Shown here piece after piece: positions 25,792 through 61,976 of a stretch of 64,000 bases of DNA. Where the stretch lies: positions 289,766-353,765 of IMG/VR virus record IMGVR_UViG_3300028735_000003. One strand, given 5' to 3'. The notes below the pieces were generated by a model that saw only the letters and a program-made list of their open reading frames with translations, did no database searches and was not told the origin of the DNA. Numbering within the stretch: the stretch's first letter is position 1; each line of letters begins with the position of its first letter. The position numbers and the translations under genes were made by a program.

Positions 25792-26059
25792 AATAATTTA
25801 TGATCTTATGCCGAGAAAACCACCAGACTAGTGATGATGGATAAATTGACTATAGTTAAAAAATCTACTACCATACTGGTATATAACCAAACAGATATGA
25901 TCGCTACCAATAACATACGCAATAACTTCATCTCTACTGCTGCTAAAAGTCAGAGGGTAGAGCAGGCTGTATGTCAATCAGTCAAATATCTCGTAGATCC
26001 ATAGACGATATACCAGCCTTGTGTTGGTAGTAATTTATATATCAGAAAGTACAATAATA

Positions 26060-44387: not shown

Positions 44388-44461
44388 TGCAAATTACAGT
44401 ACCAACGCCAAATAAAAACAAAATTAATTTATATATTCGTCTAGTCTAAAATCTAATTCAT

Positions 44462-45037
44462 GAAAACCTCGCAAGGAGACCCACGGCTTTAGCCGTGGGA
44501 GGAATTGCGGATTATAAAAGTTAATCCGCTTATTATTTTTATTTTCTACTGCTAATGATATATCTGTAATGCGAAGAATTTATAGTTTTTATTTATCCGC
44601 TCCTGATGGGTTTTTAGACTTCCTAAAAACCTGCGCAGATATCTATTCGCATCATGTCGAGTGGGCTTTCGAAAATAAATCGACCAATAAAGTTAAAGCT
44701 CATCAAGATTTATATCAGAAATTACGATCTCTTTATCCTGATATTCCTGCTAGAGCATTAGGAAAACAAGTAGTTAAAGTTGATGCAAGATATACTTCTC
44801 AAAAATGTTCTAATTGTAGAATTATTGAAAAGTCTAATATAAATAAGTCGAGATATATTTGTAGCAAATGTAGTTACATAGAACATGCAGATATTAATGC
44901 TGCTAAAAATATTAAGACAAATTATTTTATCTCGTTAGCTGAAAAGAATAACGAGCAGGCTGTTGTCAATCAGCCAAACGCAGCCAAAACTGATGTTTTG
45001 AGCAGCAAGCCCACGACTTTAGTCGTGGGTTATTGAC
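44462..45037 (+). mobile_element. non-autonomous IS200/IS605 element, copy 1
   Basis: Follows TTCAT; left hairpin CCCACGGCTTTAGCCGTGGG, right hairpin CCCACGACTTTAGTCGTGGG, ends TTGAC; near-identical to 50544-50987. Confidence 0.9.
44569..45036 (+). pseudogene. tnpB: internally deleted TnpB (155 aa, in frame)
   Basis: N-terminal segment joined to VDARYTSQKCSNC...CSKC...HADINAAKNI; RuvC I and II absent. Confidence 0.85.
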
Positions 45038-45314
45038 TATTTCGATAACCATCTAAGAATTGCTGATGAATTTCCCAAGCATCTTTGCCAAAAGACAGCT
45101 TTCCGGCACTATATTGAATACGAACAATAAGTGATTCGGGGCAAGATAACTTCTCTAATTCTTCACAAAGCCATAATCCAGCTAAACAAACCTCTCTAAC
45201 AATTGGGGATTTCGCCCATTCTGCCGGCATATTGGTGTCATTATCAATTACGTTTGACCAACGACTTATGTCGTCGTCACTAATAAATTTTGGTCTTGCC
45301 ATATTAACCCTCAT
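45030..45314 (-). CDS. hypothetical protein; 3' end replaced by the IS end
   Basis: Stop codon lies inside the IS right end. Confidence 0.6.
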   Translation of the reverse strand: MRVNMARPKFISDDDISRWSNVIDNDTNMPAEWAKSPIVREVCLAGLWLCEELEKLSCPESLIVRIQYSAGKLSFGKDAWEIHQQFLDGYRNSQ

Positions 45315-45447
45315 AATATATAATTCAAATAATAAAAATACCTAACATAATAACTTTTCTCAAACTAAATTTGAGACCAAGGCTCGGGCTCGAACATGAA
45401 TGAAAAGCTTCGTAGACTCTTACGCAGATCCACTGCAAAAGTAAAGC

Positions 45448-45524
45448 TGGCATCCCCAGAAGGATTCGAACCCTCAACCTAGCGGGTAGAAGCCGCTTGC
45501 TCTATCCAATTGAGCTATAGGGAC
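45448..45524 (-). tRNA. tRNA-Arg(TCT)
   Basis: GTCCCTA acceptor, D arm GCTC/GAGC, anticodon arm AGCGG-CTTCTAC-CCGCT, TTCGAAT loop, encoded CCA. Confidence 0.95.
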
Positions 45525-45528
45525 ATAT

Positions 45529-45560
45529 ATATTTATGTCATAAATATATGACATAAATAT
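45529..45560. repeat. perfect 14-bp inverted repeat with 4-nt spacer
   Basis: ATATTTATGTCATA-AATA-TATGACATAAATAT. Confidence 0.9.
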
Positions 45561-45980
45561 CAGAATATTACATTTTTATTTAATTGAATACGAAAATCAC
45601 ATATGTTGTAGGTTACGGCTCTATTAAGAATAGAAATAAGTTATCTTAAGCTAATGTTTCTGATATTTGATTGCCGTCTGATATTAGTAATCAAATTATT
45701 GGTAAGTATAGTAAAAAATAAGAAATGTAAATGAATTAACACAAACAAAATTAATAAAACCAACAATGCTTTATCTTGTGGAGTAATCAAATCACTTAAG
45801 CTTATAATCTATATTAAGTTGTCAACAGCATGAATATGAACCGAACCAATACAGAATAAATACTAATGATTTTTGATAATATCACGCCTTCCGGTTCAAC
45901 CATACCCAGTATTAGTATATCTTAATATTTTACTAATAGTAAGAGAAGAGTGCGAACTTTATCTTCTCGCCTATAACTAT

Positions 45981-46008
45981 AATATAAATCGTGATTTTTG
46001 CTTGTCAA
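45981..46008 (-). promoter_or_regulatory. sigma70-like promoter facing tRNA-Arg(TCT)
   Basis: TTGACA-N16-TATATT; same TATATTATA context as the tmRNA promoter. Confidence 0.55.
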
Positions 46009-46095
46009 CACCCATCTATTTTATTTATTTGGTTTTTTAATACACTTTCAACTAATAATTAGATTATTTCATTTTTAATATCAAGCGAACTTGGT

Positions 46096-47031
46096 TTGCG
46101 TCGAAAAAGTTGTCATAATGTATTTTTATCTAAAGTGAACCTGGGTAATATTCAATATTCTGATATTAATATGTACAACATAATACAACATAACGAGTTT
46201 AAAATGACCTATAATACCATAATGGATTTAGCAGATATATTTATTATTAAACTAGCTAATTTTAATAATGAAACTAATCCTGGTGGCAAACCTTTTACTA
46301 AAGTTACGGAGCAGCCAAAACACGACGAAATAGTAGAATTATCTCCAGAATTAGAAGAAATAGCCCGAAGGTTTCGTGAACGGCGAAATCCAATAAATTA
46401 TAATCCAGCAATGACCGGGGCTGGTCCACAAATAACTACACAAGAATCAGAAATAACAAAACCTGATGCGCAACAGACTACACAAGAATCAGAAATAACA
46501 AAACCTGATGCGCAACAGACTACACAAGAATCAGAAATAACAAAACCCGATGCGCAACAGACTACACAAGAATCAGAACAAGAATCAGAATTAGCTTTTA
46601 AAGTTGATCGGTATGCGTCCAGTATTGAACGCCTACTAGAATCTGATTATGCAATACTAAAAACAGTAAATTTTTTAAGAAAAAAACCAAAAGAGCTAAT
46701 GTTTATGCGATATATAGATATGAAATTTCATGAATTAAGAATGAAATATGCACATATAGCCCCATACACTTTTTATGGTAAACTAATGCAATTATTAGAA
46801 GAAGCTCCTCCACAAAACTTAGCTCTTTTTAATCCTATAAAAAATATAATGTGCTCTACAAACAGAGAAAATATCGAAAGGATTTATTATGGATCTTATG
46901 CAGATCTACTCGAATACTACCGCGAAATTGGAGTTAGTACTGACCCCAGGCGAGTACTGCATGGAGCAATGATTACTGGACTACCAAAGATATTAAATTT
47001 CGAAATTTGGTTCGAAGAAGCTAGCCGTTAA
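46096..47031 (+). CDS. hypothetical protein with 14-aa tandem repeats (probable start 46171 or 46204)
   Basis: TTQESEITKPDAQQ x3. Confidence 0.7.
   Translation: MRRKSCHNVFLSKVNLGNIQYSDINMYNIIQHNEFKMTYNTIMDLADIFIIKLANFNNETNPGGKPFTKVTEQPKHDEIVELSPELEEIARRFRERRNPINYNPAMTGAGPQITTQESEITKPDAQQTTQESEITKPDAQQTTQESEITKPDAQQTTQESEQESELAFKVDRYASSIERLLESDYAILKTVNFLRKKPKELMFMRYIDMKFHELRMKYAHIAPYTFYGKLMQLLEEAPPQNLALFNPIKNIMCSTNRENIERIYYGSYADLLEYYREIGVSTDPRRVLHGAMITGLPKILNFEIWFEEASR
46435..46578 (+). repeat. 42-bp coding tandem repeat x3.4
   Basis: ACTACACAAGAATCAGAAATAACAAAACCTGATGCGCAACAG. Confidence 0.95.
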
Positions 47032-47134
47032 TATATGTTTTAATTCGCACATAAATAAAGACCACACAATTAATTGATTTCTGTATCAATAATTAGGTCA
47101 TCAACTACATCATGATTATTAAAATCTGTAAATA

Positions 47135-47869
47135 TCACATAGATAATACAAATATTTCTTGAGATGTATTATTATTCTCTGCAACAGATCGTCTAATATA
47201 TTCGTTGTTGTCTTTAGCTAATAAAGCCAATGTTTCCGTTGATGTATTATTGTTCTCTGCGACAATTTGTCTAATATATTCACTTTTATCTTTAGCTTTA
47301 GCTAATAAAGCTAATATTTCTATAGGTGTATTCTTGTTTTCTGCAATACTTTTCCTAACAGACGACTACTTATCTTTAGCCAATAAAGCTAATGTTTCTG
47401 GAGATGTATTATTGTTTGCTGCAACATTTTGTCTAACAACTACATCATCATCTTTAGCTAATAAAGCCAACGTTACTGGAGATGTATTATTGTTTGCCGC
47501 GACATTTTGTCTAACACGTGCATCATTATCTTTAGCTAATAAAGCTAATGTAGCTGGAGACGTATTGTTATTTTCTGCAACGTAATACTTCGAATCAAGA
47601 TTCCAATAGTCCGATAGAGGATGATACAGAAGCGCTTTAGCAGTAGAGCCATCAGCAAGATTAACAGTTATAGTAGAACGACTATAACCAGCAGGTTCAA
47701 TTGTATTTCCCCATGCATTTCTGACAATGTTGCGAATCTCACGATGTCTTGCAAACGGCATTGTTTCTTTTACCTTATTGCTAACGTCCAGCGCGGTAAA
47801 CGCAAAATTATTGCGAATAAAATCACTAATAACAGTATCAACCATACTAATCAAATTAGAATCATTCAT
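47135..47869 (-). pseudogene. chimeric ORF: orphan N-terminus fused to about 5.5 LRV repeats, internal TAG at 47366
   Basis: Junction ...LDSKY|YVAENNNTS; frame continues 77 codons after the TAG to TGA at 47135. Confidence 0.8.
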
Positions 47870-47879
47870 TTTTAGTTCC

Positions 47880-48377
47880 TTACTGCAAAAAACCTTCTAA
47901 ATCTATTAACTTAAATTTACCATCACAATCTAACATTACATTTCGTGAATGCAGATCATGATATTTAAATTTTAACTTCTTAATCCAGTACAAAAAATCT
48001 CGTATGTTTTGTGAACAAAAACTCGGTATATTTTTTCTAGAATTATAGAATTCCGATAATATACTTTCAATCCACTGTTCTTCTGTATTTCTTGGTATTG
48101 GATTAAGCTTCTCCATAATATGGAAATAATACGGAGATTCCCCTTTAATATTTATTGACCCGAAATCGTATATTTTTACTACTGCTGGAGAATCAACTTC
48201 TTGCAAATATGATAATAATCTTTGGAATTTATTACCAAGATTCTTGTCATACTCATCTTGAGTAACTTTTATTATTCGGGCTGGTTTACCAGCCAGATTC
48301 CACATCCATCCGCTGCGGCATTTAATAGATTTACTCAATTCGAATCTTTTCTGTAACTCCGATTTCAACGCCCTCAT
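47880..48377 (-). CDS. protein-kinase-like fold small kinase
   Basis: IMEKL, YHDLHSRNVM, LIDLE. Confidence 0.8.
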   Translation of the reverse strand: MRALKSELQKRFELSKSIKCRSGWMWNLAGKPARIIKVTQDEYDKNLGNKFQRLLSYLQEVDSPAVVKIYDFGSINIKGESPYYFHIMEKLNPIPRNTEEQWIESILSEFYNSRKNIPSFCSQNIRDFLYWIKKLKFKYHDLHSRNVMLDCDGKFKLIDLEGFLQ

Positions 48378-48568
48378 ACTACCAATGTATACTTACAAAA
48401 CACTAGCGCAAGGGCTCGTTAATTTAAAAAACAGATGGTTTATTTATTAATTTTTTAGTAGTGAAATATGTCCATAATGTACATACAAATGTATTTTGTT
48501 TCATGATATTGTGCCAAGAAAACTACCAGCATTATGCTGGCGGTAATTGACAGAACTTGATAATCATA

Positions 48569-48862
48569 TTATGATTTTTTTCTTGATTGTCTCAAGACTT
48601 CAATTGGATTTGGTTCTTCAACCTTTAGTTGCTCCAAGAAACTGTCAGATAGTCCAGCAATTGCCCTCTCAATATCGGAAGAAACGCACTTGCATACAAC
48701 TAACTTGCCATTCTTGAATCCATCACCATTTCCATACCTTACGACAGAACTATATATACTTCCATCTTTCAATGTAGAAATCAATACACCTGGACAAGTT
48801 GCGTCTTTACTATATGCATACGAAACAGCTCTGCTTAGATTTTTTAGTAATTCATTTAACAT
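48569..48862 (-). CDS. hypothetical protein
   Basis: 97 aa, AAGGAG Shine-Dalgarno upstream. Confidence 0.65.
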   Translation of the reverse strand: MLNELLKNLSRAVSYAYSKDATCPGVLISTLKDGSIYSSVVRYGNGDGFKNGKLVVCKCVSSDIERAIAGLSDSFLEQLKVEEPNPIEVLRQSRKKS

Positions 48863-48986
48863 TATTCTTCTCCTTTAACATTGCAACACAACATTATATC
48901 AATAATTTAAATAAGATAAAATAATTATATAATGTAAGCTAAGACAAAATATTCACATTAATAATAAAAATAACCTAAAAACATAT

Positions 48987-49484
48987 TTAAGGTTTATAAT
49001 CATAAAGAGTTGTTCTGGCTCCCTGTGTATCATAAATATATTTGGAGAAATTAATTATTGTGCCCATATAATAATCCCAATTTCCTCCAACAGCGCCACA
49101 ACCAATGCCTACAGGCATAGCTACACTTTCTAAATCTGGGATACGTGCAACAGCAATTAAAGCTTTATGAAAATACTTTTGTCGTGCTTTTTCTCCATCT
49201 AATTGAGACGTAGGATACTTTGGTATGCCTGGATAATATTGCCCAAATATTGCAATAATATATCTTTGATCTTTTCCATTACCTCTAACAATTATAGTTC
49301 CAGGAACATCTGGCTTTGTTCTAGTACTATATATATCCGCGTAAGGGTAACGTTCGAAAATTGCCTTTGCCAAACCAGCCGATTTTTTTGTAACACAATT
49401 GGTCTGATGTATAATATATTTTTCAGAACTAATAAGTAAATCACCTTTAACAATATTTAACATTAACTTCCGCCCATTTATCAT
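48987..49484 (-). CDS. macrodomain protein (ADP-ribose binding/hydrolase)
   Basis: KGDLL, IIHQTNC, GLAKAI, IGCGAVGG. Confidence 0.88.
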   Translation of the reverse strand: MINGRKLMLNIVKGDLLISSEKYIIHQTNCVTKKSAGLAKAIFERYPYADIYSTRTKPDVPGTIIVRGNGKDQRYIIAIFGQYYPGIPKYPTSQLDGEKARQKYFHKALIAVARIPDLESVAMPVGIGCGAVGGNWDYYMGTIINFSKYIYDTQGARTTLYDYKP

Positions 49485-49657
49485 ATTTTCTTTTCAAGAA
49501 ATAAAACAAAGTAAGTTATCAATCTAAAACAAGATATATAGTTCAATTAAATCACTGATTTTTTTACACATATATGTTTTCTCACAACAAATGGCTTAGT
49601 TTCGCCAAAGAGATCATATTATTTTCTTTCCTATAAAATAGGCTTGGGGTCACTATT

Positions 49658-50146
49658 TTAAGCATATTTCCACCAATATGGAATTGTTCTATTAGTCCAC
49701 TTAGCCAAAGATTGTTTGGCGCCGATATAATATCTTCGATATGCATCCACGGCATTTTCTGCCTTGTACTCATTAGGCATACACTGAACGAAATCTGTCA
49801 AATCACCATCAGGTAAATTAAAGTCTCTTTTTGAAAAGAGCTCAAGGTATTCTTGGCATTTATGTATCTTTCCATATCTATAAGTATATTCCTTGCACAA
49901 TGACAAACCAAGATTATTTAACCAAATAAAATTAGATTTTGTTTTAGATGCCCAAATACTTGCCGGATGATTGTTGTGAGTAATTTTATATATTGGAATA
50001 ACATTATTATGTCTATACACTGCGTTGTTCAGCAACTGCGTCGTTTCCAAAATCATTTTTACTACATGACGATCTACATGATACATAGCACATTGTTCAG
50101 GGTCTAAATCTAGCACAAATATATTCATATTTATTAAAACTCCCAC
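49658..50146 (-). CDS. pyrimidine-dimer DNA glycosylase/DenV-like protein (probable start 50128)
   Basis: MNIFVLD, HVVKMILE..QLL, HNNHP..W, EYTYRYGKIH. Confidence 0.85.
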   Translation of the reverse strand: MGVLINMNIFVLDLDPEQCAMYHVDRHVVKMILETTQLLNNAVYRHNNVIPIYKITHNNHPASIWASKTKSNFIWLNNLGLSLCKEYTYRYGKIHKCQEYLELFSKRDFNLPDGDLTDFVQCMPNEYKAENAVDAYRRYYIGAKQSLAKWTNRTIPYWWKYA

Positions 50147-50270
50147 TATTAAACGTGATGATTAAAACAATAAAATTAGATAAAACTTTCCAATAGCTTA
50201 CAGATTATCAATAGCGTATATAAATTTATATTATGGACTATAAAAACATGATAGCACATCTAGCGCCAAC

Positions 50271-50543
50271 TTACTTAACTTGAGTCTCGAATTCAATGAT
50301 GTATCGCAAACAGTGTTGTTGACCAGCTCCAGAAGGCGTATAAGTAATGATCTCATCATTGAGAACACTAGACTTACCACCAACAGCGAATACACTATGA
50401 TATGGATAAATCGAATTCTTAGAATAAAAGTAGGAGCCATTTGCATACTTATAATTACCGAAAGCCACATCCGCCAAAAACAAATATGCAGTCTTGTTGC
50501 TACCTTGTGCCCAATAAGACCCCCTTACGTCACAATAATTCAT
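50271..50543 (-). pseudogene. C-terminal half of a PARP-like ADP-ribosyltransferase, cut by IS copy 2
   Basis: NYC...YLFLADVAFG...SVFA..GKSSVLNDEIITY...Q..LRYIIEF; ATGAA start coincides with the IS TTCAT site. Confidence 0.8.
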
Positions 50544-50987
50544 GAAAACCTCGCAAGGAGACCCACGGCTTTAGCCGTGGGAGGAATTGCGGATTATAAA
50601 AGCTAATCAGCTTATTATTTTTATTTGATTTTCTACTGCTAATGATATACATATCTGTGATGCGAAGAACTTATAATTTTTATTTATCCGCTCCTGATGG
50701 GTTTTTAGACTTCCTAAAAACCTGCGCAGATATTTATTCGCATCATGTCGAGTGGGCTTTCGAAAATAAATCGACCAATAAAGTTAATAGAAATAAGTCG
50801 AGATATATTTGTAACAAATGTGGTTACATAGGACATGCAGATATTAATGCTGCTAAAAATATTAAGATAAATTACTTTCTCTCGTTAGCTGAAAAGAATA
50901 ACGAGCAGGCTGTTGTCAATCAGCCAAACGCAGCCAAAACTAATGTTTTGAGCAGCAAGCCCACGACTTTAGTCGTGGGTTATTGAC
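50544..50987 (+). mobile_element. tnpB: non-autonomous IS200/IS605 element, copy 2 (114-aa in-frame mini-TnpB at 50642-50986)
   Basis: Same TTCAT flank, end hairpins and TTGAC end as copy 1, with a larger internal deletion. Confidence 0.9.
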
Positions 50988-51157
50988 TTACACACAGTTT
51001 TATTGGTTTTGCAGAATTAAGTAATATATAAAAAGCAGAATACAGAGAAAACTGTGTGTCAATCAGCACACTGTCTATGAAATCAAAAGTCAAACCACCA
51101 GACTTATGCTGGTTGTAATTTACAAGCTAATTAATTTACATCTATTATAAGGTGGAT

Positions 51158-51331
51158 ATGAAAAACATTGTAAAATTACTGAAAGATAACAACGGATCTA
51201 ACCTAGTAGAATATATAATTTTAGTTGGAGTAATTGCTCTTATAGATATTGCTGGTTTCAAGATCTTTGGTGAAAAAGTTAATAGTAAAATTCAAGAGCA
51301 ATCTAATAAAGTTGAACAGATTGGAAATTAA
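51158..51331 (+). CDS. flp: Flp/type IVb prepilin (57 aa, absent from ORF track)
   Basis: MKNIVKLLKDNNG|SNLVEYIILVGVIALIDIAGFKIFGEKV...: Gly at cleavage site, Glu+5, Tyr+6, hydrophobic helix; AAGGTGG upstream. Confidence 0.88.
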   Translation: MKNIVKLLKDNNGSNLVEYIILVGVIALIDIAGFKIFGEKVNSKIQEQSNKVEQIGN

Positions 51332-51486
51332 CAAACTTTAGTCATCGTGCCGATAATACAATCGTGTCAGCGCTGCGTACAATATAAGCATGAAAACTCT
51401 TCAGGCAAGCCGCCACAAAATTAAAAAATCCATTGCAACTTTCCCACCCGTAGCAGATACACAATATACCCGCAATAGAATCTAGC

Positions 51487-51558
<72 letters not shown>

Positions 51559-51796: not shown

Positions 51797-54121
51797 TTAT
51801 GTATTATCATCTCTTCCACTTAAAATTATCTTTTTAATTTCTGGATCTACAGAATAATTATTCAATAAAATTTTATCAATTTCATCATTATTTAGGTCAA
51901 GTAATCTAAGTTGAACTTTATAAGAAATATTAAAGTGTTTAGCTAATAATTTAAGATCATCAATCGGTGGATTACTATCAATAAACTCTAATCGTTGTTC
52001 TTCTGTGCCAAAATCGACCACGTAATATTTGTCATATTCTATTTCCTTTTTAGGAAATTCTCTAGGCGGTAATATTGGCTTACGTCTATCCGCCTCATAT
52101 TCATCAATCAAAGCTAATATTTCTGGAGTAACATTATTGTTTTTTTTGACATTTTGCCTAACATCTTTATCACTATCTTTAGCTAATAAAGCTAATATTT
52201 CAGTAGATGTATTATTGTTTGCCGCAACATTTTGTCTAACATATACATTATTATCTTTAGCCAATAAGGCTAATGTTCCTGAATATGTATTATTATTTGC
52301 TGCAACATTTTGTCTAACACCATGATAATTATCTTTAGCTAAGAAAGCTAATATTTCTGTAGGTGTATTATTGTTCTCTGCAACATTTTGTCTAACAAAT
52401 ACATCATTATCTTTAGCTAAGAACGCTAATATTTCTGTAGGTGTATTATTGTTTACTGCAACAGCCTGTCTAACATATTCATTGTTGTCTTTAGCTAATA
52501 AAGCTAATATTTCTGGTGATGTATGCTTGTTTGATGCAACATATTGTCTAAGATATTTATCATTATCTTTAGTAGCCAATAAAGCTAGTATTTCTTGAGG
52601 TGTATTATTGTTTTTTGCAACGCTTCTTCTAACATCGAAATCATCATCTTTAGCTAATAAAGATAATGTTTCTGGAGACGTATTATTATTTCTTGCAACA
52701 TTTATCCTAACAAATTTATAATAATCTTTAGCTAATAAAGCTAATATTTCTGTTGATGTATGCTTGTTTGATGCAACAAATTCTCTAACATTTGTGTTAT
52801 TATCTTTAGATAATAAAGTCAAAGTTTCTGGAGATGTATTATTGTTTTCTGCAACATTTCTCCTAACATATTCATCATTATCTTTAGCTAAGAAAGCCAA
52901 TGTTTCTGTAGGTGTATTCTTGTTGTCTGCGACACTCATTCTAACAAATGCATGGTAATCTTTAGCTAATAAAACTAGTGTTTCTGGGAGTGTATTGCTG
53001 TTTTTTGCAACTAGTTGTCTAACATCTCCGTCATTATCTTTAGCTAATAAAGCTAATGCTTCTGGAGGTGTATTATTATTTGCTGCAACATATTGTCTAA
53101 TATATACATCATTATCTTTAGATAATCTAGCTAATATCCTAGGATCAGTTTCTTCTTCTATTAATACACGCCTAAATTCATCATTCAAATATTTATAAGC
53201 TTGAATCTTTTGGTTATACTGTATATCATGTTCCATCATATATGAAACAATATCAACCTGGTTTTTAATCTTTTGATATTTTTCAGGAAAATGATATATA
53301 TTAAAATTAGGATTAACAGAAATAGCAACAGCCATAAAATGATTAAATTCTTCTAAAGATAATAATCCTTCCATGGCGTAAACAATAGCACCGGCAGGAA
53401 AAGCTTCAGCATCTTTAATAATTATCTCCTTTACTAAATTATAACCAGGGATATTTTCTGGGTCATAAATTTTATCAATAGCATCAAACGCTTCTATTTT
53501 TAATACATTATTGTCTACATCTCTTTGAGCTGCAAAAGCCACTTTATACAACGTATTGTGTGAAGGTAATGTCTTATCTATAAAATAATATATTACAACA
53601 TTATGATTTATATAGTTTTCATAATGAGGAACTTCTTGAGATGTTACACACCATCTTGTACCAGATCCGAAAGAACATGCTGCTAAATGAGTGTCAGGTC
53701 TAATTAACACATATCTTTCATTCTCAAATAATTTTTTGGCTGATTCATCCTTTACTTCAACAGTTCTTCTAACTTTATTCTCTAGGTCTTTAAGAACTTT
53801 ATTTAACTCTTCTAACGAGTTAAACTTTGAAATATCTCTATATTCTTCAGCAAGAGCTGGTAATTTTCTATCAAATAAATTAATAGAGTTTACTAATTCT
53901 TCTTGTGATTCTCCTTTGACTAGTTGACTAACTATCCAATCAAGATATTTCTGTTTAACTTTTTTGTTATTGGTTAAATCATCTATCTGAGAAGACAAAT
54001 GAGGATATCTATTTTTTAGATCCTTTACTGCTGCGGTCAGTATTATACTGTATAATCCCATCCTTGAGATCTTATAAAAATTATCGATTGATGATATTAA
54101 TTGACTATACTTGTACATCAC
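51797..54121 (-). CDS. LRV/HEAT-like repeat protein paralogue 1 (13 repeats)
   Basis: Conserved N-terminal domain (FGSGTRWCVTS), 26-aa repeats, conserved C-terminal cap. Confidence 0.93.
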   Translation of the reverse strand: MMYKYSQLISSIDNFYKISRMGLYSIILTAAVKDLKNRYPHLSSQIDDLTNNKKVKQKYLDWIVSQLVKGESQEELVNSINLFDRKLPALAEEYRDISKFNSLEELNKVLKDLENKVRRTVEVKDESAKKLFENERYVLIRPDTHLAACSFGSGTRWCVTSQEVPHYENYINHNVVIYYFIDKTLPSHNTLYKVAFAAQRDVDNNVLKIEAFDAIDKIYDPENIPGYNLVKEIIIKDAEAFPAGAIVYAMEGLLSLEEFNHFMAVAISVNPNFNIYHFPEKYQKIKNQVDIVSYMMEHDIQYNQKIQAYKYLNDEFRRVLIEEETDPRILARLSKDNDVYIRQYVAANNNTPPEALALLAKDNDGDVRQLVAKNSNTLPETLVLLAKDYHAFVRMSVADNKNTPTETLAFLAKDNDEYVRRNVAENNNTSPETLTLLSKDNNTNVREFVASNKHTSTEILALLAKDYYKFVRINVARNNNTSPETLSLLAKDDDFDVRRSVAKNNNTPQEILALLATKDNDKYLRQYVASNKHTSPEILALLAKDNNEYVRQAVAVNNNTPTEILAFLAKDNDVFVRQNVAENNNTPTEILAFLAKDNYHGVRQNVAANNNTYSGTLALLAKDNNVYVRQNVAANNNTSTEILALLAKDSDKDVRQNVKKNNNVTPEILALIDEYEADRRKPILPPREFPKKEIEYDKYYVVDFGTEEQRLEFIDSNPPIDDLKLLAKHFNISYKVQLRLLDLNNDEIDKILLNNYSVDPEIKKIILSGRDDNT

Positions 54122-54129
54122 AAATATAC

Positions 54130-54147
54130 TTACATATTAATATGTAA
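54130..54147. promoter_or_regulatory. 18-bp palindrome upstream of paralogue 1
   Basis: TTACATATTAATATGTAA. Confidence 0.7.
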
Positions 54148-54190
54148 AAATTAAAAAAAATTTTTATAAATATGTTATCACAAACTATAC

Positions 54191-56731
54191 CTAATAGTCT
54201 TTTCCACCCAGAATTATCTTTTTAATTTCCGGATCTACCGTATAGTTATTCAACAATATCTCATCAATTTCATCATTATTTAAATAAAGCAATCTGAGTT
54301 GAACTTTATAAGAGATATTAAAGTGTTTAGCCAATAATTTAAGATCATTAATTGGAGGATTACTATCAATAAATTTTAATCGTTGTTCTTCTGTACCAAA
54401 ATTGATTATATAGTTGTTGTCATATTCTATTTCTTTTTTAGGAAACTCTCTAGGATGTAATATTCGCTTGGGTTTAGCGGATTCATATTCATCTATTAAA
54501 GCTAATATTTCTGGAGTAACATTATTGTTTTTTGCAACGAGTTGTCTAACATCTTTATCACTATCTTTAGCTAATAAAGCTAACGTTGCTGTAGATGTAT
54601 TATTATTTGCTGCGACTAGTCTTCTGACTGACACCTCATTATCTTTGGCTAATAAATCCAATGTTTCTGGAGATGTATTATTATTTCTTGCAACATTTTG
54701 TCTAACATGTACATCATTATCTTTAGCTAATAAAGCTAATGTGGCTGGAGATGTATTATTATGTTCTGCAACATGTTGTCTAATAGATGTATATTTATCT
54801 TTAGCTAATAAAGCTAATATTTCTGGAGACATATTACTGTTTAATGCAAGATGTGTTTTAACATATATACTGTTACTTTTAGCCAATAAAAATAATATTT
54901 TTGTAGGTGTATTATTATTTGCTGCAACATATATTCTAACATCCTCATCATAATCTTTATATAATAAAGATAATGTTTCTTTAGATGTATTATTATTTTT
55001 TGCAACATGTTGCCTAACAGACACATCTCTATCTTTAGCTAGCAAAGCTAATGTTTCTGGAGATGTATTATTATTTCCTGCAACATTTGTCCTAACAATC
55101 GCATCATTATCTTTGGCTAATAAAACTAACGTTTCTTGAGATGTATTATTATTTTTTGCAACATTTCTCTTAACAAAGACACCATTGTTTTTAGCTAATA
55201 AATCCAATGTTTCTTTGGATGTATTATTGTTTGCTGCAACAGATTGTCTAACATATGTATTATTATCTTTAGCTAATAGATCTAATATTTCTGGAGATGT
55301 ATTATTATGTTCTGCAACAGATTGCCTAATAATCTCATAATTATCTTTAGCTAATAAAGCAAATATCTCTGAATGAGTGTTATGGTTTTTTGCAACATAT
55401 TCTCTAACAGATACATCATTATCTCTAGCTAACAAAGCTAATGTTTCTGCAGAAGTATTATTATTTGCCGCAACATTTTGTCTAACATTTAAATCATTAT
55501 CTTTAGCTAATAAAGCTAATGTAGCTGGAGACGTATTGTTATTTTCTGCAACGTATTCTCTAACAGATACATCATTATCTCTAGCTAACAAAGCTAATGT
55601 TTCTGCAGAAGTATTATTATTTGCCGCAACAGATTGTCTAATATATTTACCATTATCTCTAGCTAACAAAGCTAATGTTTCTGCAGATGTATTCTTGTTT
55701 TCTGCAACAGCTTGTCTAACATATTTATCATTGTCTTTAGCTAATTTAGCTAATACCCTTGGATCAGTTTCCTTTTCTGTTAGTACTAGTTTAAATTCAT
55801 CATTTAAATATTTATAAACTTGAAGTTTTTGATTATATTGTATGTTATGTTTCATAACATATGAAAAAATATCCGTCTGTTTTTTAATCTGTTGATATTT
55901 TTCAGGGAAAGAAGACAAATCAAAATAAGCGCCAACATCAATAGCAACAGACATAAAATGATTAAATTCTTCTAAAGATAATAATCCTTCCATGGCGTAA
56001 ACAATAGCACCAGCGGGAAAAGCTTCAGCATCTTTAATAATTATCTGCTTTACCAAATTATAACCAGCAATATCTTCTGGTTCATAAATTTTATCAGTCG
56101 CATCAAATGCTTCTATTTTTAATACGTTATTGTCTAGATCTCTTTGAACAGCAAAAGCTACTTTATACAATATATTTTGTGAAGGCAAGGTCTTATCTAT
56201 AAGATAATATATTACAACATTATGATTTATATAGTTTTCATAGTGAGGAACTTCTTGAGATGTTACACACCATTTTGTACCAGATCCAAAAGAACATGCT
56301 GCTAACTTAGTATCTGGTCTAATTAACACATATCTTCCATTTTCAAATAATTTCTTGGCTGATTCATCTTTTACTTCAACAGTTCTTCTAACCTTATTTT
56401 CTAGGTCATTAAGAACTTTCTTTAAATCTGCTAACGAATTAACCCTTGAAATATCTCTATTTTCTACAGAAAGAGCTGGTAATTTTCTATCAAACAACTC
56501 AATATAACGTAATAATTCTTCTTGAGATTCTCCTTTGTCTAATTGATAAACTATCCAATCAAGATATTTCGATTTAACTTTACCATTTAAATAATCTATT
56601 TTAGAAGACAGATGAGGATATCTATCTTTTAAATGCTTTACTGATGCGGTCAGTATTATACTGTATAACCCCATCCTTGAGATCTTATAAAAATTATCAA
56701 TTGATGATATTAGTTGACTATACTTGTACAT
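54191..56731 (-). CDS. LRV/HEAT-like repeat protein paralogue 2 (16 repeats)
   Basis: Same architecture as paralogue 1. Confidence 0.93.
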   Translation of the reverse strand: MYKYSQLISSIDNFYKISRMGLYSIILTASVKHLKDRYPHLSSKIDYLNGKVKSKYLDWIVYQLDKGESQEELLRYIELFDRKLPALSVENRDISRVNSLADLKKVLNDLENKVRRTVEVKDESAKKLFENGRYVLIRPDTKLAACSFGSGTKWCVTSQEVPHYENYINHNVVIYYLIDKTLPSQNILYKVAFAVQRDLDNNVLKIEAFDATDKIYEPEDIAGYNLVKQIIIKDAEAFPAGAIVYAMEGLLSLEEFNHFMSVAIDVGAYFDLSSFPEKYQQIKKQTDIFSYVMKHNIQYNQKLQVYKYLNDEFKLVLTEKETDPRVLAKLAKDNDKYVRQAVAENKNTSAETLALLARDNGKYIRQSVAANNNTSAETLALLARDNDVSVREYVAENNNTSPATLALLAKDNDLNVRQNVAANNNTSAETLALLARDNDVSVREYVAKNHNTHSEIFALLAKDNYEIIRQSVAEHNNTSPEILDLLAKDNNTYVRQSVAANNNTSKETLDLLAKNNGVFVKRNVAKNNNTSQETLVLLAKDNDAIVRTNVAGNNNTSPETLALLAKDRDVSVRQHVAKNNNTSKETLSLLYKDYDEDVRIYVAANNNTPTKILFLLAKSNSIYVKTHLALNSNMSPEILALLAKDKYTSIRQHVAEHNNTSPATLALLAKDNDVHVRQNVARNNNTSPETLDLLAKDNEVSVRRLVAANNNTSTATLALLAKDSDKDVRQLVAKNNNVTPEILALIDEYESAKPKRILHPREFPKKEIEYDNNYIINFGTEEQRLKFIDSNPPINDLKLLAKHFNISYKVQLRLLYLNNDEIDEILLNNYTVDPEIKKIILGGKDY

Positions 56732-56742
56732 TACAAATATAT

Positions 56743-56760
56743 TTACATATTAATACACAA
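56743..56760. promoter_or_regulatory. degenerate 18-bp palindrome upstream of paralogue 2
   Basis: TTACATATTAATACACAA. Confidence 0.6.
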
Positions 56761-56792
56761 AAATAAAAAAATTATAGGTATGTTATTACGGA

Positions 56793-59186
56793 TTAGGTCT
56801 TGTAATCTCTTCCACTTAAAATTATTTTTTTAATTTCCGGATCTACCGTATAGTTATTCAACAATATCTCATTAATTTCATCATTATTTAAATCAAGCAA
56901 TCTGAGTTGAACCTTATAAGAGATATTAAAGTGTTTAGCTAATAATTTAAGATCATTAATCGGTGGATTACTATCAATAAATTTCAGTCGTTGTTCTTCT
57001 GTACCGACGTTGATTATATAGTTGTTGTCAAATTCTATTTCTTTTTTAGGAAACTCTCTAGTAGGTAATATTCTCTTACGTCTATCTGCTTCATATTCAT
57101 CTATTAAAGATAATATTTCTGGAGTAACGTTTTTGTTTTTTGTAACAGCTTGTCTAACGCCTTTATCGCTATCTTTAGCTAATAAAGCTAATGTTTCTTG
57201 TGGTGTATTATTGTTTTTTGCAACATTTTTTCTAACATATTTATCACTATCTTTAGCTAATAAAGCTAATATTTCTGTAGATGTATTATTATTCGATGCA
57301 ACATTTTCTCTAACAAACACATCATTATCTTTATACAATAAAGATAATGTTTCTGGAGATGTATTATTATTTTTTGCAACTAGTCTTCTAACAACTACGT
57401 CACTACCTTTAGTTAATAAAGACAATGTTTCTGGATGTGTATTATTGTTTTTTGCAACATTTTGTCTAACAACTTTATCATCGTCTTTAGCTAATAAAAA
57501 CAATGTTTCTGCTGAAGTATTATTGTTTTTTGCAACATGTTGTCTAACACCGTCATCATAATCTTTAGCTAATAAAGCTAATGTTTCTGGAGATGTATTA
57601 TTGTTTGATGCAACATTTTCTCTAACAAGAACATCATTATCTATAGCCAATAAAGCTAATATTTTCTGAGATGTATTATTATTTTCTGCAACACCTTGCC
57701 TAATATATCTACTATTATCTTTAGCTAATAACCCTAATATTTCTTGAGGTGTATTATTATTTAGTGCAACATGTTCTCTAACATATTCATTATCTTTAAC
57801 TAATAAATATAATATTTCTTTAGGTGTATTATTATTTCCTGCAACACGTTGTCTAACACGTTCATTGTGATCTTTGCTCAATAAAGCAAATATTTCTTTA
57901 GGTGTATTATTGTTTTTTGCAACATTTTCCCTAACAGTTATATCATTATCTTTAGCTAATAAAGCTAATACTTCTGGAGGTGTATTATTGTTTTTTGCAA
58001 CATTTTCCCTAACAGTTATATCATTATCTTTAGCTAATAAAGCTAATACTTCTGGAGGTGTATTATTATTTCCTGCAACATTCTCTCTTACAAGTGCATA
58101 ATTATCTTTAGCTAATAAAGCTAATACTTCTGGAGGTGTATTATTATTTCCTGCAACATATTGTTTAATATATGCATCATTAGCCAATATACTCAATATC
58201 CTTGGATTAGTTTCTTCTTTTACTAATGCGCGCATAAATTCATAATCTAAATATTTATAAGCCTGAAGTTTTTGATTATATTGTATATCATGTTCCATGA
58301 TATAAGAAACAATATCAACCTGTTTTTTAACCTGTTGATATTTTTCTGGGAACTCATCCAAATTAAAAGGATGGCCAACAGAAATAGCAACAGACATAAA
58401 ATGATTAAATTCTTCTATAGACAATAATCCCTCTTTTGCGTATACAACGGCACCAGTAGGAAAAGCTTCAGCATCTTTGATAATTATTTCTTTTACTAAA
58501 TTATAACCAGGCATATCTTCTGGTTTATAAATTTTATCAGCCGCGTCAAACGCCTCTATTTTTAATACCTTATTATCTAGATCTCTTTTAGCCGCAAAAG
58601 CCACTTTATACAATATATTTTGTGAAGGTAAGGTCTTATCTATAAGATAATAAATTACAGTGTTGTGATTTATATAGTTTTCATAATGAGGAACTTCTTG
58701 AGAAGTTATGCACCATCTTGTACCAGATCCAAAAGAACATGCTGCCAAATGAGTATCTGGTCTAATTAATACATATCTTTCATTTTCAAATAATTTCTTG
58801 GCTGATTCATCTTTTACTTCAACAGTTCTTCTAACTTTATTCTCTAGGTCTTTAAGAACTTTATTTAACTCTTCTAATGACTTAAACTTCGAAATATCCC
58901 TATATTCTGCAGCAAGAGCTTGTGATTTTCTATCAAATAAATTAATAGAGTTTACTAATTCTTCTTGTGATTCTCCTTTGAGAAGTTGACTAACTATCCA
59001 ATCAAGATATTTCGGTTTAACTCCTTTGTTGATTAAATAATCTATCTGAGAAGATAGCTCAGGATATTTTTCTTTTAGAGCCTTTACTGATACGGTTGAT
59101 GCGGTCAGTATTATACTGTATAATCTCATACTTGAGATTTTATAAAAATTATCAATTGATGATATTAATTGACTATACTTGTACAT
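56793..59186 (-). CDS. LRV/HEAT-like repeat protein paralogue 3 (14 repeats)
   Basis: Same architecture; includes a near-exact 78-bp tandem duplication starting at 57901. Confidence 0.93.
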   Translation of the reverse strand: MYKYSQLISSIDNFYKISSMRLYSIILTASTVSVKALKEKYPELSSQIDYLINKGVKPKYLDWIVSQLLKGESQEELVNSINLFDRKSQALAAEYRDISKFKSLEELNKVLKDLENKVRRTVEVKDESAKKLFENERYVLIRPDTHLAACSFGSGTRWCITSQEVPHYENYINHNTVIYYLIDKTLPSQNILYKVAFAAKRDLDNKVLKIEAFDAADKIYKPEDMPGYNLVKEIIIKDAEAFPTGAVVYAKEGLLSIEEFNHFMSVAISVGHPFNLDEFPEKYQQVKKQVDIVSYIMEHDIQYNQKLQAYKYLDYEFMRALVKEETNPRILSILANDAYIKQYVAGNNNTPPEVLALLAKDNYALVRENVAGNNNTPPEVLALLAKDNDITVRENVAKNNNTPPEVLALLAKDNDITVRENVAKNNNTPKEIFALLSKDHNERVRQRVAGNNNTPKEILYLLVKDNEYVREHVALNNNTPQEILGLLAKDNSRYIRQGVAENNNTSQKILALLAIDNDVLVRENVASNNNTSPETLALLAKDYDDGVRQHVAKNNNTSAETLFLLAKDDDKVVRQNVAKNNNTHPETLSLLTKGSDVVVRRLVAKNNNTSPETLSLLYKDNDVFVRENVASNNNTSTEILALLAKDSDKYVRKNVAKNNNTPQETLALLAKDSDKGVRQAVTKNKNVTPEILSLIDEYEADRRKRILPTREFPKKEIEFDNNYIINVGTEEQRLKFIDSNPPINDLKLLAKHFNISYKVQLRLLDLNNDEINEILLNNYTVDPEIKKIILSGRDYKT

Positions 59187-59197
59187 TACAAATATAC

Positions 59198-59215
59198 TTA
59201 CATATTAATATGTAA
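59198..59215. promoter_or_regulatory. 18-bp palindrome upstream of paralogue 3
   Basis: TTACATATTAATATGTAA. Confidence 0.7.
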
Positions 59216-59249
59216 AAATTAAAAAATTTTATAAATATGTTATCACAAA

Positions 59250-61913: not shown

Positions 61914-61924
61914 TACAATTATAC

Positions 61925-61942
61925 TTACATATTAATATGTAA
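61925..61942. promoter_or_regulatory. 18-bp palindrome upstream of paralogue 4
   Basis: TTACATATTAATATGTAA. Confidence 0.7.
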
Positions 61943-61976
61943 AAATTAAAAAAATTTATAAGTATATCATTACGAA

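What the first reader, a model, noticed from the sequence alone, without database searches (positions are those of the whole stretch)
48987..50543. PARP-like writer, UV glycosylase and macrodomain eraser in one run, with the writer decapitated by an IS
Seen: order on the minus strand is PARP C-half (catalytic NDE retained), DenV-like, macrodomain. The IS sits exactly at the PARP MNY codons, and the sequence beyond the IS has an in-frame stop and no PARP N-half, so the 5' part was deleted or rearranged. Established: PARP-family enzymes add ADP-ribose, macrodomains remove or bind it, and hosts use ADP-ribosylation (DarTG type) against phages. Inference: a phage ADP-ribosylation cycle tied to DNA repair or counter-defence; the remaining 90-aa piece has its own ATG.
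Basis: partly seen in the sequence, partly recalled or inferred. Interest (0 to 1): 0.6.

Follow-up and report, generated by a model that had tools for sequence, protein, structure and literature searches.

The report
Broken phage PARP beside intact partners
A giant phage carries the last 90 codons of a PARP-type ADP-ribosyl transferase, the rest removed by a small mobile element, next to intact UV-repair-like and macrodomain genes; relatives keep the whole cassette, so this copy is a recent natural knock-out of the "writer".

Summary
On the minus strand lie a 90-codon PARP C-terminal relic (50271-50543), a T4-endonuclease-V-like gene (49658-50128) and a macrodomain gene (48987-49463).

The relic abuts a 444-bp internally deleted TnpB (IS200/IS605-type) element (50544-50987). 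A 96%-identical relative (L080) shows the unbroken site. In the window, 1,276 bp are replaced by the element: 58 bp upstream plus PARP codons 1-406, covering WGR, the regulatory domain, and the His and Tyr of the H-Y-E triad. Both junctions sit at the element's TTCAT target motif, so the deletion looks element-mediated. The ATG of the relic is the native Met407. No N-half exists elsewhere in the 353-kb record.

About 30 related phages have full-length PARP followed by this macrodomain. NADAR follows in 25. The slot between PARP and macro holds the endoV-like gene in 10-11 and the unrelated UV endonuclease UvdE in 2. PARP is independently broken in L080 (frameshift) and L117 (truncation).

In this genome the writer is a dead, very recent pseudogene, and an active ADP-ribosylation cycle is not supported. 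The cassette's link to UV-lesion incision is contextually supported but untested. Phage PARPs, macrodomains and NADARs are already known.

The parts
48987..49484 (-). Macrodomain gene. It is intact. The likely start is the ATG at 49463, giving 158 aa.
   Evidence: Pfam Macro E 2e-3, below cut-off; phrog_335 E 1.5e-12. AlphaFold model pLDDT 92. Foldseek: VEEV nsP3 macro E 7e-9, TARG1, and T. aquaticus DarG macro at TM 0.73. hhalign to T4 Tk.4: 94% probability. All residues invariant across 30 homologues are present.
49658..50128 (-). T4-endonuclease-V-like (Pyr_excise family) gene. It is intact, 156 aa from the invariant MNIF start. The longer GTG ORF runs to 50146.
   Evidence: Pfam PF03013 23.8 bits against cut-off 23; phrog_624 E 5e-53. 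Model pLDDT 97. VIA-align ranks T4 endoV 1enj first, Z 8.7 with 118 residues aligned; the next hit is 5.5. 2,326 homologues, most carrying PF03013. Invariant residues are present.
50271..50543 (-). PARP C-terminal relic: 90 codons, equal to residues 407-496 of the intact orthologue. It keeps the NYC tyrosine and the catalytic Glu (NDE). It lacks the His and Tyr of H-Y-E and all N-terminal domains.
   Evidence: DNA is identical to L080 apart from one base.
50539..50543 (+). TTCAT, the target-adjacent motif of the element. Its reverse complement supplies the native ATG of Met407.
   Evidence: All ten left-end flanks in the genome read WTCAT. The empty site in L080 reads ...TTCAT followed by native sequence.
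50544..50987 (+). 444-bp non-autonomous derivative of an IS200/IS605-type TnpB element. It has subterminal hairpins at 50562-50581 and 50960-50979. A 114-aa TnpB C-terminal remnant ORF lies at 50642-50986.
   Evidence: Pfam Cas12f1-like_TNB 31.4 bits against 26.3; phrog_506 transposase. The genome holds 10 left and 10 right ends; the longest copies are 1,254-1,263 bp. Contig depth over the element is 12-19 times that of the flanks.
50988..51151 (.). Retained intergenic DNA that lay upstream of the PARP gene. It is homologous to L080 up to position 874, which is 58 bp before the PARP start.
   Evidence: blastn 95% identity, L080 360-874 = window 51497-50988. The deleted segment is L080 875-2150.
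51152..51331 (+). Small conserved hydrophobic ORF (59 aa, weak Flp/Fap-like hit). It is the ancestral upstream neighbour of PARP and marks the preserved synteny.
   Evidence: Pfam E 2e-3. Conserved in L004, L005 and L080.
48569..48862 (-). Conserved 97-aa ORF downstream of the macrodomain gene, of unknown family. In L004 it is followed by NADAR, which is absent here.
   Evidence: 76% identical to L004 5956-6249. NADAR at L004 6252-6683 scores 128 bits. No NADAR in this record.

Best explanation
The locus is the decayed copy of a cassette conserved in a lineage of environmental jumbo phages. The cassette order is: a PARP1/2-like ADP-ribosyl transferase (WGR, helical regulatory domain, catalytic domain with H-Y-E); then a variable slot that often holds a UV-lesion incision enzyme (T4-endoV-like, or UvdE); then a macrodomain; then usually a NADAR.

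In this phage a 444-bp TnpB-derived IS200/IS605-type element replaces 1,276 bp. The lost DNA comprises 58 bp upstream of PARP and its first 406 codons. What remains is a 90-codon relic starting at the native Met407.

Both junctions lie directly 3' of the element's TTCAT target motif. The deletion was therefore most likely made by the element itself. One route is two insertions followed by recombination between the copies. The other is an intramolecular transposition event.

The relic cannot bind NAD+ or act as a transferase, so the writer is dead. NADAR is also missing. The endoV-like and macrodomain genes are intact and presumably work without the phage's own PARP, in lesion incision and in removal of ADP-ribose made by other enzymes respectively.

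Shown: the anatomy, the homologies, the empty site, the conserved linkage, and the recurrent PARP lesions.
Inferred: the route of the deletion, and every biochemical activity.
For: Identity of the relic and domain content of the intact orthologues.

Empty site and exact limits: L080 875-2150 is replaced by window 50544-50987, and ATGAA (reverse complement TTCAT) begins both L080 875 and L080 2151. The ten left-end flanks read WTCAT.

Synteny is kept on both sides.

No N-half, NADAR or UvdE in the record.

The same junction occurs in L079, L081 and run X1. The unbroken allele occurs in L080 and run X2.

Recombination between copies of this element does occur. The element in L079 is a hybrid: it carries window-type SNPs in its first ~315 bp and SNPs of the copy at genome 6954 in its last ~90 bp.

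Cassette conservation within the PARP clade of 33 loci:
- macro downstream in 30,
- NADAR in 25,
- endoV-like in 10-11,
- UvdE in 2.

Independent PARP lesions: a T5-to-T4 frameshift in L080, also seen in an X2 contig, and a truncation in L117.

The macro and endoV folds are confirmed.
Against: The record is estimated 79% complete, so an intact PARP in the missing part cannot be strictly excluded.

The element is repeated ten times, and no single contig of run X1 spans it.

The L080 frameshift could be a shared sequencing error if L080 and X2 come from the same sample.

Window and L080 differ by too few substitutions to show selection on the surviving genes.

No activity of any of these proteins has been measured.

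The catalytic residues of the endoV-like family could not be mapped onto T4 endoV: hhalign was not significant and there was no PDB sequence hit.

The only Y1 transposase found in the genome belongs to an element with unrelated ends.
Confidence: 0.85

Rival explanations
1. The cassette is a counter-defence or host-takeover module rather than a repair module. In this reading PARP modifies host proteins, while macro and NADAR strip ADP-ribose put on phage DNA or proteins by host transferases (DarT-type) or degrade ADP-ribose-derived signals. That would explain why the erasers survive without the phage writer.
For: The erasers are kept while PARP is lost in three independent cases: the window, L080 and L117. 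The macro fold is close to DarG and TARG1. Published surveys propose such roles for phage Macro and NADAR (PMC9503650, PMC11125620). A phage DarG-like antitoxin has been reported (PMC13309987, abstract listed).
Against: The WGR plus regulatory-domain architecture is that of DNA-break-activated PARPs. Two unrelated UV-lesion endonucleases alternate in the slot next to PARP. The PARP losses in the window and L080 are too recent to say the erasers are under selection.
Confidence: 0.35
2. The 1,276-bp deletion arose first, by slippage between the two 5-bp ATGAA repeats. The element then inserted at the single remaining TTCAT, so the element did not cause the loss.
For: The deleted segment is bounded by a 5-bp direct repeat.
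Against: This requires the element to land by chance exactly on the deletion joint, out of a very large number of TTCAT sites in a 353-kb AT-rich genome. It also requires the repeat to be, by chance, the element's own target motif. Recombination between copies of this element is directly seen in L079.
Confidence: 0.08
3. The 90-codon ORF is a functional new small protein. It would be translated from the native ATG using the GAGG that the element's left end places five bases upstream.
For: The frame is open for 90 codons. GAGG lies at 50552-50549, followed by a 5-nt spacer and the ATG. Gene callers annotate the ORF in two assemblies.
Against: Its DNA is identical to the L080 orthologous segment, so the open frame says nothing about constraint. 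It lacks half of the NAD+ pocket. Its protein cluster has one member. A hairpin followed by a T-run lies just upstream on the same strand. No RNA run holds the region. Only 2 of 10 element copies face a long outward ORF.
Confidence: 0.04
4. The truncation is an assembly artefact caused by the tenfold repeated element.
For: Short-read contigs break inside the element. One assembly (L079) joins the left junction to a different right flank.
Against: Three assemblies share the left junction. In run X1 both junction contigs have matching depth, 69 and 61. The right flank is the ancestral upstream neighbour of PARP. No PARP N-half is found in the whole record. The alternative allele appears cleanly in another run.
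Confidence: 0.03

Closest known systems
Eukaryotic and bacterial DNA-dependent PARPs of the PARP1/2/3 type (WGR - helical regulatory domain - ART with H-Y-E)
   Same: The intact orthologues (for example L004 3022-4512) match PARP2 and PARP1 chains at E 6e-29. They carry Pfam WGR, PARP_reg and PARP. The His, Tyr and Glu are invariant in nine phage sequences.
   Different: The window's copy keeps only residues 407-496. The phage proteins are about 500 aa, with no zinc fingers or BRCT. No activity has been tested.
PARP homologues already reported in phages: Xanthomonas phage XacN1 BBA65562.1 (PMC7824862); Aeromonas phage Aeh1 and Cellulophaga phage phi4:1 (PMC4245714); Klebsiella phage 05F01
   Same: Same domain architecture. 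The relic aligns to their C-termini at 35-42% identity.
   Different: Those loci show no macro, endoV-like or NADAR gene beside PARP. The clade studied here has the conserved PARP-macro-NADAR order.
T4 endonuclease V (DenV), pyrimidine-dimer DNA glycosylase/AP lyase
   Same: Pfam family PF03013 at the cut-off. Best structural match, Z 8.7 over 118 residues. The family is abundant in cyanophages.
   Different: No significant sequence or profile alignment to T4 DenV. The equivalents of the N-terminal amine and Glu23 could not be assigned. The family has its own invariant set: MNIF start, His21, Lys24, Glu28, Gln31.
Macrodomain hydrolases TARG1, DarG, alphavirus nsP3 and T4 Tk.4
   Same: Macro fold at probability 1.0. 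TM 0.73 and rmsd 2.9 to the T. aquaticus DarG macro bound to ADP-ribose. Profile match to T4 Tk.4.
   Different: Below the Pfam Macro cut-off. The catalytic Lys of TARG1/DarG is not among the family's invariant residues. There is no DarT partner.
IS200/IS605-family TnpB elements (ISDra2, IS608 type) and their miniature derivatives
   Same: A TnpB C-terminal domain, subterminal hairpins, insertion 3' of a 5-nt motif without target duplication, and many internally deleted copies.
   Different: No TnpA lies within the family. The only Y1 transposase in the genome sits in an element with unrelated ends. The two longest copies have TnpB split over two frames. Host of the element: a jumbo phage.

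Membership tests
PARP / ARTD catalytic domain (PF00644) | Significant match to the family profile | tested here: inconclusive
   The 90-aa relic gives no Pfam hit at E <= 1, and the genome search finds nothing. It is, however, 67-83% identical to the C-termini of proteins that score 65-92 bits on PF00644.
PARP / ARTD catalytic domain (PF00644) | H-Y-E triad and a complete NAD+ fold | tested here: not met
   The relic starts after the His (GWHGTR) and Tyr (GIYW). It retains only the Glu of NDE. The triad is met in the orthologues.
DNA-dependent PARP (PARP1/2/3 type) | WGR and helical regulatory domains N-terminal to the catalytic domain | tested here: not met
   Absent from the window and from the whole record. 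Present in L004, L080 and others.
Macro domain | Macro fold | tested here: met
   Foldseek probability 1.0 with 240 matches at E <= 1e-3. The Pfam score, 18.3, is under the cut-off of 22.
Macro domain | ADP-ribose binding or hydrolysis | not testable with these tools
   Only conservation of family-invariant residues is shown.
T4 endonuclease V / Pyr_excise (PF03013) | Profile match and fold | tested here: met
   23.8 bits against 23.0, and 24.3 bits. Top structural match, Z 8.7.
T4 endonuclease V / Pyr_excise (PF03013) | N-terminal amine nucleophile and catalytic Glu23 | tested here: inconclusive
   The N-terminus MNIF and Glu28 are invariant in 40 sequences. No reliable residue alignment to T4 DenV was obtained.
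IS200/IS605 TnpB element | TnpB remnant, terminal hairpins, insertion 3' of a fixed short motif without duplication | tested here: met
   The empty site is seen in L080.
DarTG-type toxin-antitoxin | A DarT transferase fused or adjacent to the macrodomain antitoxin | tested here: not met
   No DarT match in the record. The writer in relatives is a WGR-PARP, often separated from macro by other genes.

The most novel reading that the evidence does not exclude
A lineage of jumbo phages from mats and hot springs carries a virus-encoded analogue of eukaryotic single-strand-break signalling. In this reading a UV-lesion incision enzyme (endoV-like, or UvdE in its place) makes a nick. A WGR-PARP senses the nick and writes ADP-ribose. 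Macro and NADAR erase it. The writer is a conditionally costly gene that is repeatedly lost: through a TnpB-element deletion here, a frameshift in L080 and a truncation in L117. The incision enzyme and the erasers persist.
Probability: 0.3. Interest if true: 0.7.

Novelty: new member of a known kind. Interest (0 to 1): 0.48.

Why it matters
The locus offers a naturally occurring allelic pair at about 96% DNA identity. One allele (L080 / X2 type) has the unbroken site. The other (the window) has the writer's 5' part cleanly removed. More distant relatives have a fully intact cassette. That makes an untested question approachable with natural variants: what a phage PARP does, and whether its macro and NADAR partners depend on it.

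Two unrelated UV-damage endonucleases alternate at the same position next to PARP. This is contextual evidence, not seen in the papers I read, that phage PARPs are tied to lesion incision.

The two TTCAT-bounded junctions and the hybrid element in L079 are clear footprints of a TnpB-family element reshaping a phage genome.

For this genome, the practical message is that the 90-aa ORF should be annotated as a PARP pseudogene fragment, not as an enzyme.

Tried and rejected
1. Pfam, PHROGs and a PDB sequence search on the 90-aa piece gave nothing. Homology came only from tblastn and from relatives.

2. The genome search with PF00644, PF01661 and PF08719 on the record found nothing. Its first look also misses the macro gene that hmmscan detects. 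I therefore repeated the absence tests with tblastn and clade HMMs on all six frames.

3. I first took the relic's ATG to be supplied by the element, because all ten copies start CATG (note 1). The empty site in L080 shows ATG is the native Met407 and that CAT belongs to the target motif. The earlier idea is withdrawn.

4. The idea that the element regularly provides a ribosome-binding site to genes at its left end failed. Only 2 of 10 copies face a long outward ORF.

5. Mapping the T4 DenV catalytic residues by profile methods failed. Foldseek alone barely sees the fold, E 5.4.

6. dN/dS between the window and L080 is uninformative, with 0-7 changes per gene.

7. Rfam found nothing credible in or beside the element. 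The HEARO hit is 24.7 bits against 83 and on the wrong strand. The promoter scan was at chance level.

8. An RNA-repair role for the macro gene via KptA is not supported. No KptA was found, and the RNA ligase and RlaP genes lie 15-23 kb away.

9. The radical-SAM genes found in the slot in some relatives are B12-methyltransferase-like or RlmN/Cfr-like, not photoproduct lyases.

10. No complex prediction and no big representative search were run, because no claim here rests on them.
Full report
WHAT THE WINDOW IS
The window is the last 64 kb of a 353,765-bp IMG/VR virus record, classed as linear and estimated 79% complete. G+C is about 31%. Other genes in the window fit a jumbo phage: a topoisomerase, a T4-type RNA ligase, RlaP, adenylosuccinate synthetase, and intein-bearing genes. 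Public runs that hold the region come from a microbial-mat metagenome and a hot-spring metagenome.

CHECK OF THE OBSERVATION
Three ORFs lie head to tail on the minus strand.

The 90-codon ORF (50271-50543) has no Pfam, PHROG or PDB sequence match on its own. By tblastn it aligns to the last ~86 residues of proteins annotated as PARP in Klebsiella phage 05F01, Xanthomonas phage XacN1 and two huge uncultured phages. The two annotated ones, 05F01 and XacN1, carry WGR, PARP_reg and PARP domains.

The middle ORF passes the Pfam Pyr_excise cut-off narrowly, at 23.8 against 23 bits. It belongs to a large family of 2,326 proteins, mostly carrying PF03013. A confident model (pLDDT 97) has T4 endonuclease V as its best structural match, Z 8.7 over 118 residues. 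The next hit scores 5.5.

The third ORF scores below the Pfam Macro cut-off. It folds (pLDDT 92) into a macrodomain closest to alphavirus nsP3, TARG1 and DarG macrodomains. It is a profile-level relative of T4 Tk.4.

Upstream of the 90-codon ORF the frame closes at once. The neighbouring 114-aa ORF is the C-terminal end of a TnpB.

THE INTACT CASSETTE IN RELATIVES
I searched viral contigs with the endoV-like protein and found 75 loci. The six closest carry a full-length PARP of 495-500 aa directly upstream and the same macrodomain downstream.

The PARP of L004 has WGR, PARP_reg and PARP domains. It matches PARP2 and PARP1 chains at E 6e-29. The His of GWHGTR, the Tyr of GIYW and the Glu of NDE are invariant in nine phage sequences. 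The window's relic begins exactly at the NYC that follows the triad Tyr. It keeps the Glu but lacks the His, the Tyr and everything N-terminal.

A second search with a PARP alignment gave 77 loci. The results within the clade whose PARP is at least 51% identical to L004 (33 loci) are:
- The same macrodomain subfamily lies downstream on the same strand in 30 loci. Two of the three exceptions end at the contig edge.
- A NADAR gene follows macro in 25 loci.
- The endoV-like gene sits between PARP and macro in 10-11 loci.
- In two further loci (L086, L111) the same slot holds a UvdE/UvsE UV-damage endonuclease: PF03851 at E 2e-49, and TIGR00629 at 127 bits against a cut-off of 124.

On a PARP tree, the presence of the endoV-like gene needs at least six changes. 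More distant phage PARPs (25-40% identity) show no such neighbours.

The constant core is therefore PARP-macro-NADAR. The lesion-incision gene is a frequent, exchangeable occupant of the slot between PARP and macro.

WHAT HAPPENED IN THE WINDOW
Exact-protein look-ups recovered three very close contigs.

L080 (JGI, 6.8 kb, 96% DNA identity) has the unbroken site. Alignment shows that L080 360-874 equals window 51497-50988, and L080 2151 onward equals window 50543 downward. L080 875-2150 (1,276 bp) is replaced in the window by 50544-50987 (444 bp). The lost DNA is 58 bp of upstream sequence plus PARP codons 1-406.

In L080 the codon at the junction is ATG (…KSMNYC…). The relic's start codon is therefore the native Met407, not part of the element. 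I had first assumed the opposite, because all ten copies of the element begin CATG after variable flanks. The empty site shows that CAT belongs to the target. The ten flanks read WTCAT, so the target-adjacent motif is TTCAT or ATCAT.

The other junction also sits at this motif. L080 875-879 is ATGAA, the reverse complement of TTCAT, as is L080 2151-2155. By my estimate from base composition, a random breakpoint would coincide with this 5-mer about twice in a thousand. The deletion is thus bounded by two legitimate insertion sites of the element.

The simplest routes are two:
- two insertions, followed by homologous recombination between the direct copies;
- an intramolecular transposition from one end to the second motif.

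A rival is slippage between the two 5-bp repeats followed by insertion exactly on the joint. It needs an unlikely coincidence.

THE ELEMENT
The element is an internally deleted derivative of a TnpB-only IS200/IS605-type element, made of roughly 250 bp of left end and 200 bp of right end. The record holds ten left ends and ten right ends. The longest copies are 1,254-1,263 bp, and their TnpB is split over two frames at the same place. Contig depth over the element in run X1 is 12-19 times that of the flanks.

The genome encodes one Y1 transposase, at 62,924-63,289. It lies in an element whose ends are unrelated. The enzyme that moves this family is not identified.

Recombination between copies is directly visible. 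L079 (ENA, 23 kb) joins the PARP-relic side of the element to the right flank of the copy at genome 6,954. Its element is a hybrid, with window-type SNPs in the first ~315 bp and SNPs of the other copy in the last ~90 bp. The identical stretch between these SNPs is under 100 bp, while the contig name suggests a k of 141. The hybrid is therefore probably a real molecule.

IS THE TRUNCATION REAL?
- The left junction is present in the IMG/VR record, in L079, and in L081, which is a 3,011-bp contig 100% identical to window 47555-50565.
- In run X1, contigs cover both junctions at matching depth, 69 and 61.
- In run X2, a 5-kb contig carries 1,276 letters in place of the element, which is the L080-type allele.
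- Both sides of the element are syntenic with L004 and L080. The 5' part was deleted in place, not moved.
- tblastn with three full PARPs, and a clade HMM on all six-frame ORFs of the record, find only the relic.

OTHER LESIONS
L080's own PARP has a one-base deletion in a T5 run after codon 428 (window position 50476). It shifts the frame before the catalytic Glu. The X2 contig shows the same deletion.

L117 keeps only about 160 N-terminal residues of PARP, yet retains macro and NADAR.

The window and L080 lack NADAR, which is present in L004 and 24 others.

The relic's DNA is otherwise identical to L080. The neighbouring genes differ by 0-7 substitutions. The lesions are therefore very recent, and selection on the survivors cannot be measured.

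HOW IT MOST LIKELY WORKS
Shown: the writer in this genome is a fragment without the NAD+-binding His and Tyr and without its DNA-sensing domains. The endoV-like and macro genes retain every residue that is invariant in their families.

Inferred for intact relatives, from established knowledge of PARP1/2/3. WGR binds DNA breaks and relieves auto-inhibition by the helical domain. T4 endoV and UvdE both nick DNA at UV lesions. The proposed chain is lesion incision, then nick sensing by the WGR-PARP, then ADP-ribosylation, then removal by macro and NADAR. The exchange of two unrelated UV endonucleases in the same slot is the main contextual support.

An alternative of similar weight is that the module serves host takeover or counter-defence, with the erasers acting on host-made ADP-ribose. 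That would explain their persistence without the writer. No DarT or KptA is found in the record, so a toxin-antitoxin reading or an RNA-repair reading is not supported.

The relic could in principle be translated, since the element places GAGG five bases before the ATG. Nothing indicates that it is.

COMPARISON WITH WHAT IS KNOWN
PARP homologues in phages are on record: Aeh1 and phi4:1 (PMC4245714), XacN1 (PMC7824862), and gut jumbo phages (PMC11662467). Phage Macro and NADAR domains have been surveyed (PMC9503650), and phage NADAR activity has been tested on ADP-ribosyl-guanine (PMC11125620). In the passages of these papers that I searched for PARP, macro and NADAR I found no description of this PARP-(endoV-like/UvdE)-macro-NADAR order, nor of its recurrent loss of the writer. 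I have not made an exhaustive search.

I file the finding as a new member of known kinds: a pseudogenised phage PARP beside known eraser families, disrupted by a known type of element.

VERDICT
The functional inference holds for relatives as a hypothesis, but not for this genome, where the cycle lacks its writer. Interest is moderate. It rests on the conserved cassette, on the alternation of UV endonucleases next to PARP, on the natural knock-out series, and on the clean footprints of the TnpB-family element.

Noticed in passing
window 51797-63998 (minus strand) and genome 420-980: An array of at least five consecutive large genes (774, 846, 797, 887 and more than 580 aa) built almost wholly of ~26-aa leucine-rich-repeat-variant (LRV) units. 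Smaller LRV genes lie at 47366-47869. Both ends of the record lie in such repeats, so the assembly probably broke there.
   Followed up: partly
L079 (ENA contig k141_91645) against genome 6951-12530 and window 44897-50988: A near-identical phage contig joins the PARP-relic side of the element to the right flank of the element copy at genome 6954, through a hybrid element. If the genome is circularly permuted, this variant lacks at least 20 kb, including the LRV gene array.
   Followed up: partly
L080 2151-2462; window position 50476; run X2 contig: The closest relative with the unbroken site has a one-base deletion in a T5 run. It frameshifts its PARP before the catalytic Glu. This is a second, independent lesion of the same gene.
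   Followed up: partly
L117 5893-9821: A relative with PARP cut after about residue 160, followed by unrelated ORFs and then intact macro and NADAR. This is a third independent PARP loss.
   Followed up: partly
L086 7732-8643 and L111 8526-9437: A UvdE/UvsE UV-damage endonuclease occupies the slot between PARP and macro that holds the endoV-like gene in other relatives.
   Followed up: yes
window 44459-45035; genome 150620-151873 and 284749-285994: A second, 577-bp copy of the same element lies in the window. The two longest copies in the genome have TnpB split into two frames at the same point (…KQKKARN / RNKETEK…). This is either a shared lesion or a programmed frameshift.
   Followed up: partly
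genome 284749 (left end of an element copy): The TTCAT motif at this copy is the start codon (on the other strand) of an apparently full-length 103-aa ORF. The element's end places GAGG five bases upstream of it, as at the PARP relic.
   Followed up: partly
genome 62867-64436: A different IS200/IS605-type element with a Y1 transposase (147 aa, PF01797 at E 1e-39), followed by a TnpB-sized region split into two ORFs (159 and 234 aa). Its ends are unrelated to the 444-bp family.
   Followed up: partly
window 51486-51556: A perfect run of about 24 ATA/AAT trinucleotide units in the intergenic region upstream of the former PARP operon. Public contigs break there.
   Followed up: no
window 51046-51123, 25959-26037, 48520-48552; genome 4688-4765, 19589-19667: A ~78-bp intergenic motif repeated at 70-82% identity in several intergenic regions. 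One copy lies in the retained DNA upstream of the lost PARP start. It may be a regulatory element.
   Followed up: no
window 29754-31895 and 33075-35045: LAGLIDADG domains lie inside an AAA-type ATPase gene and inside an RlaP (RNA-repair nucleotidyltransferase) gene, which suggests inteins. A T4-type RNA ligase 1 gene lies at 26553-27824.
   Followed up: no
L093 7443-8702, L105, L106, L113; L099 8482-9417: Radical-SAM genes recur in the PARP-macro slot of some relatives. One type is B12-binding and methyltransferase-like; the other is RlmN/Cfr-like.
   Followed up: partly
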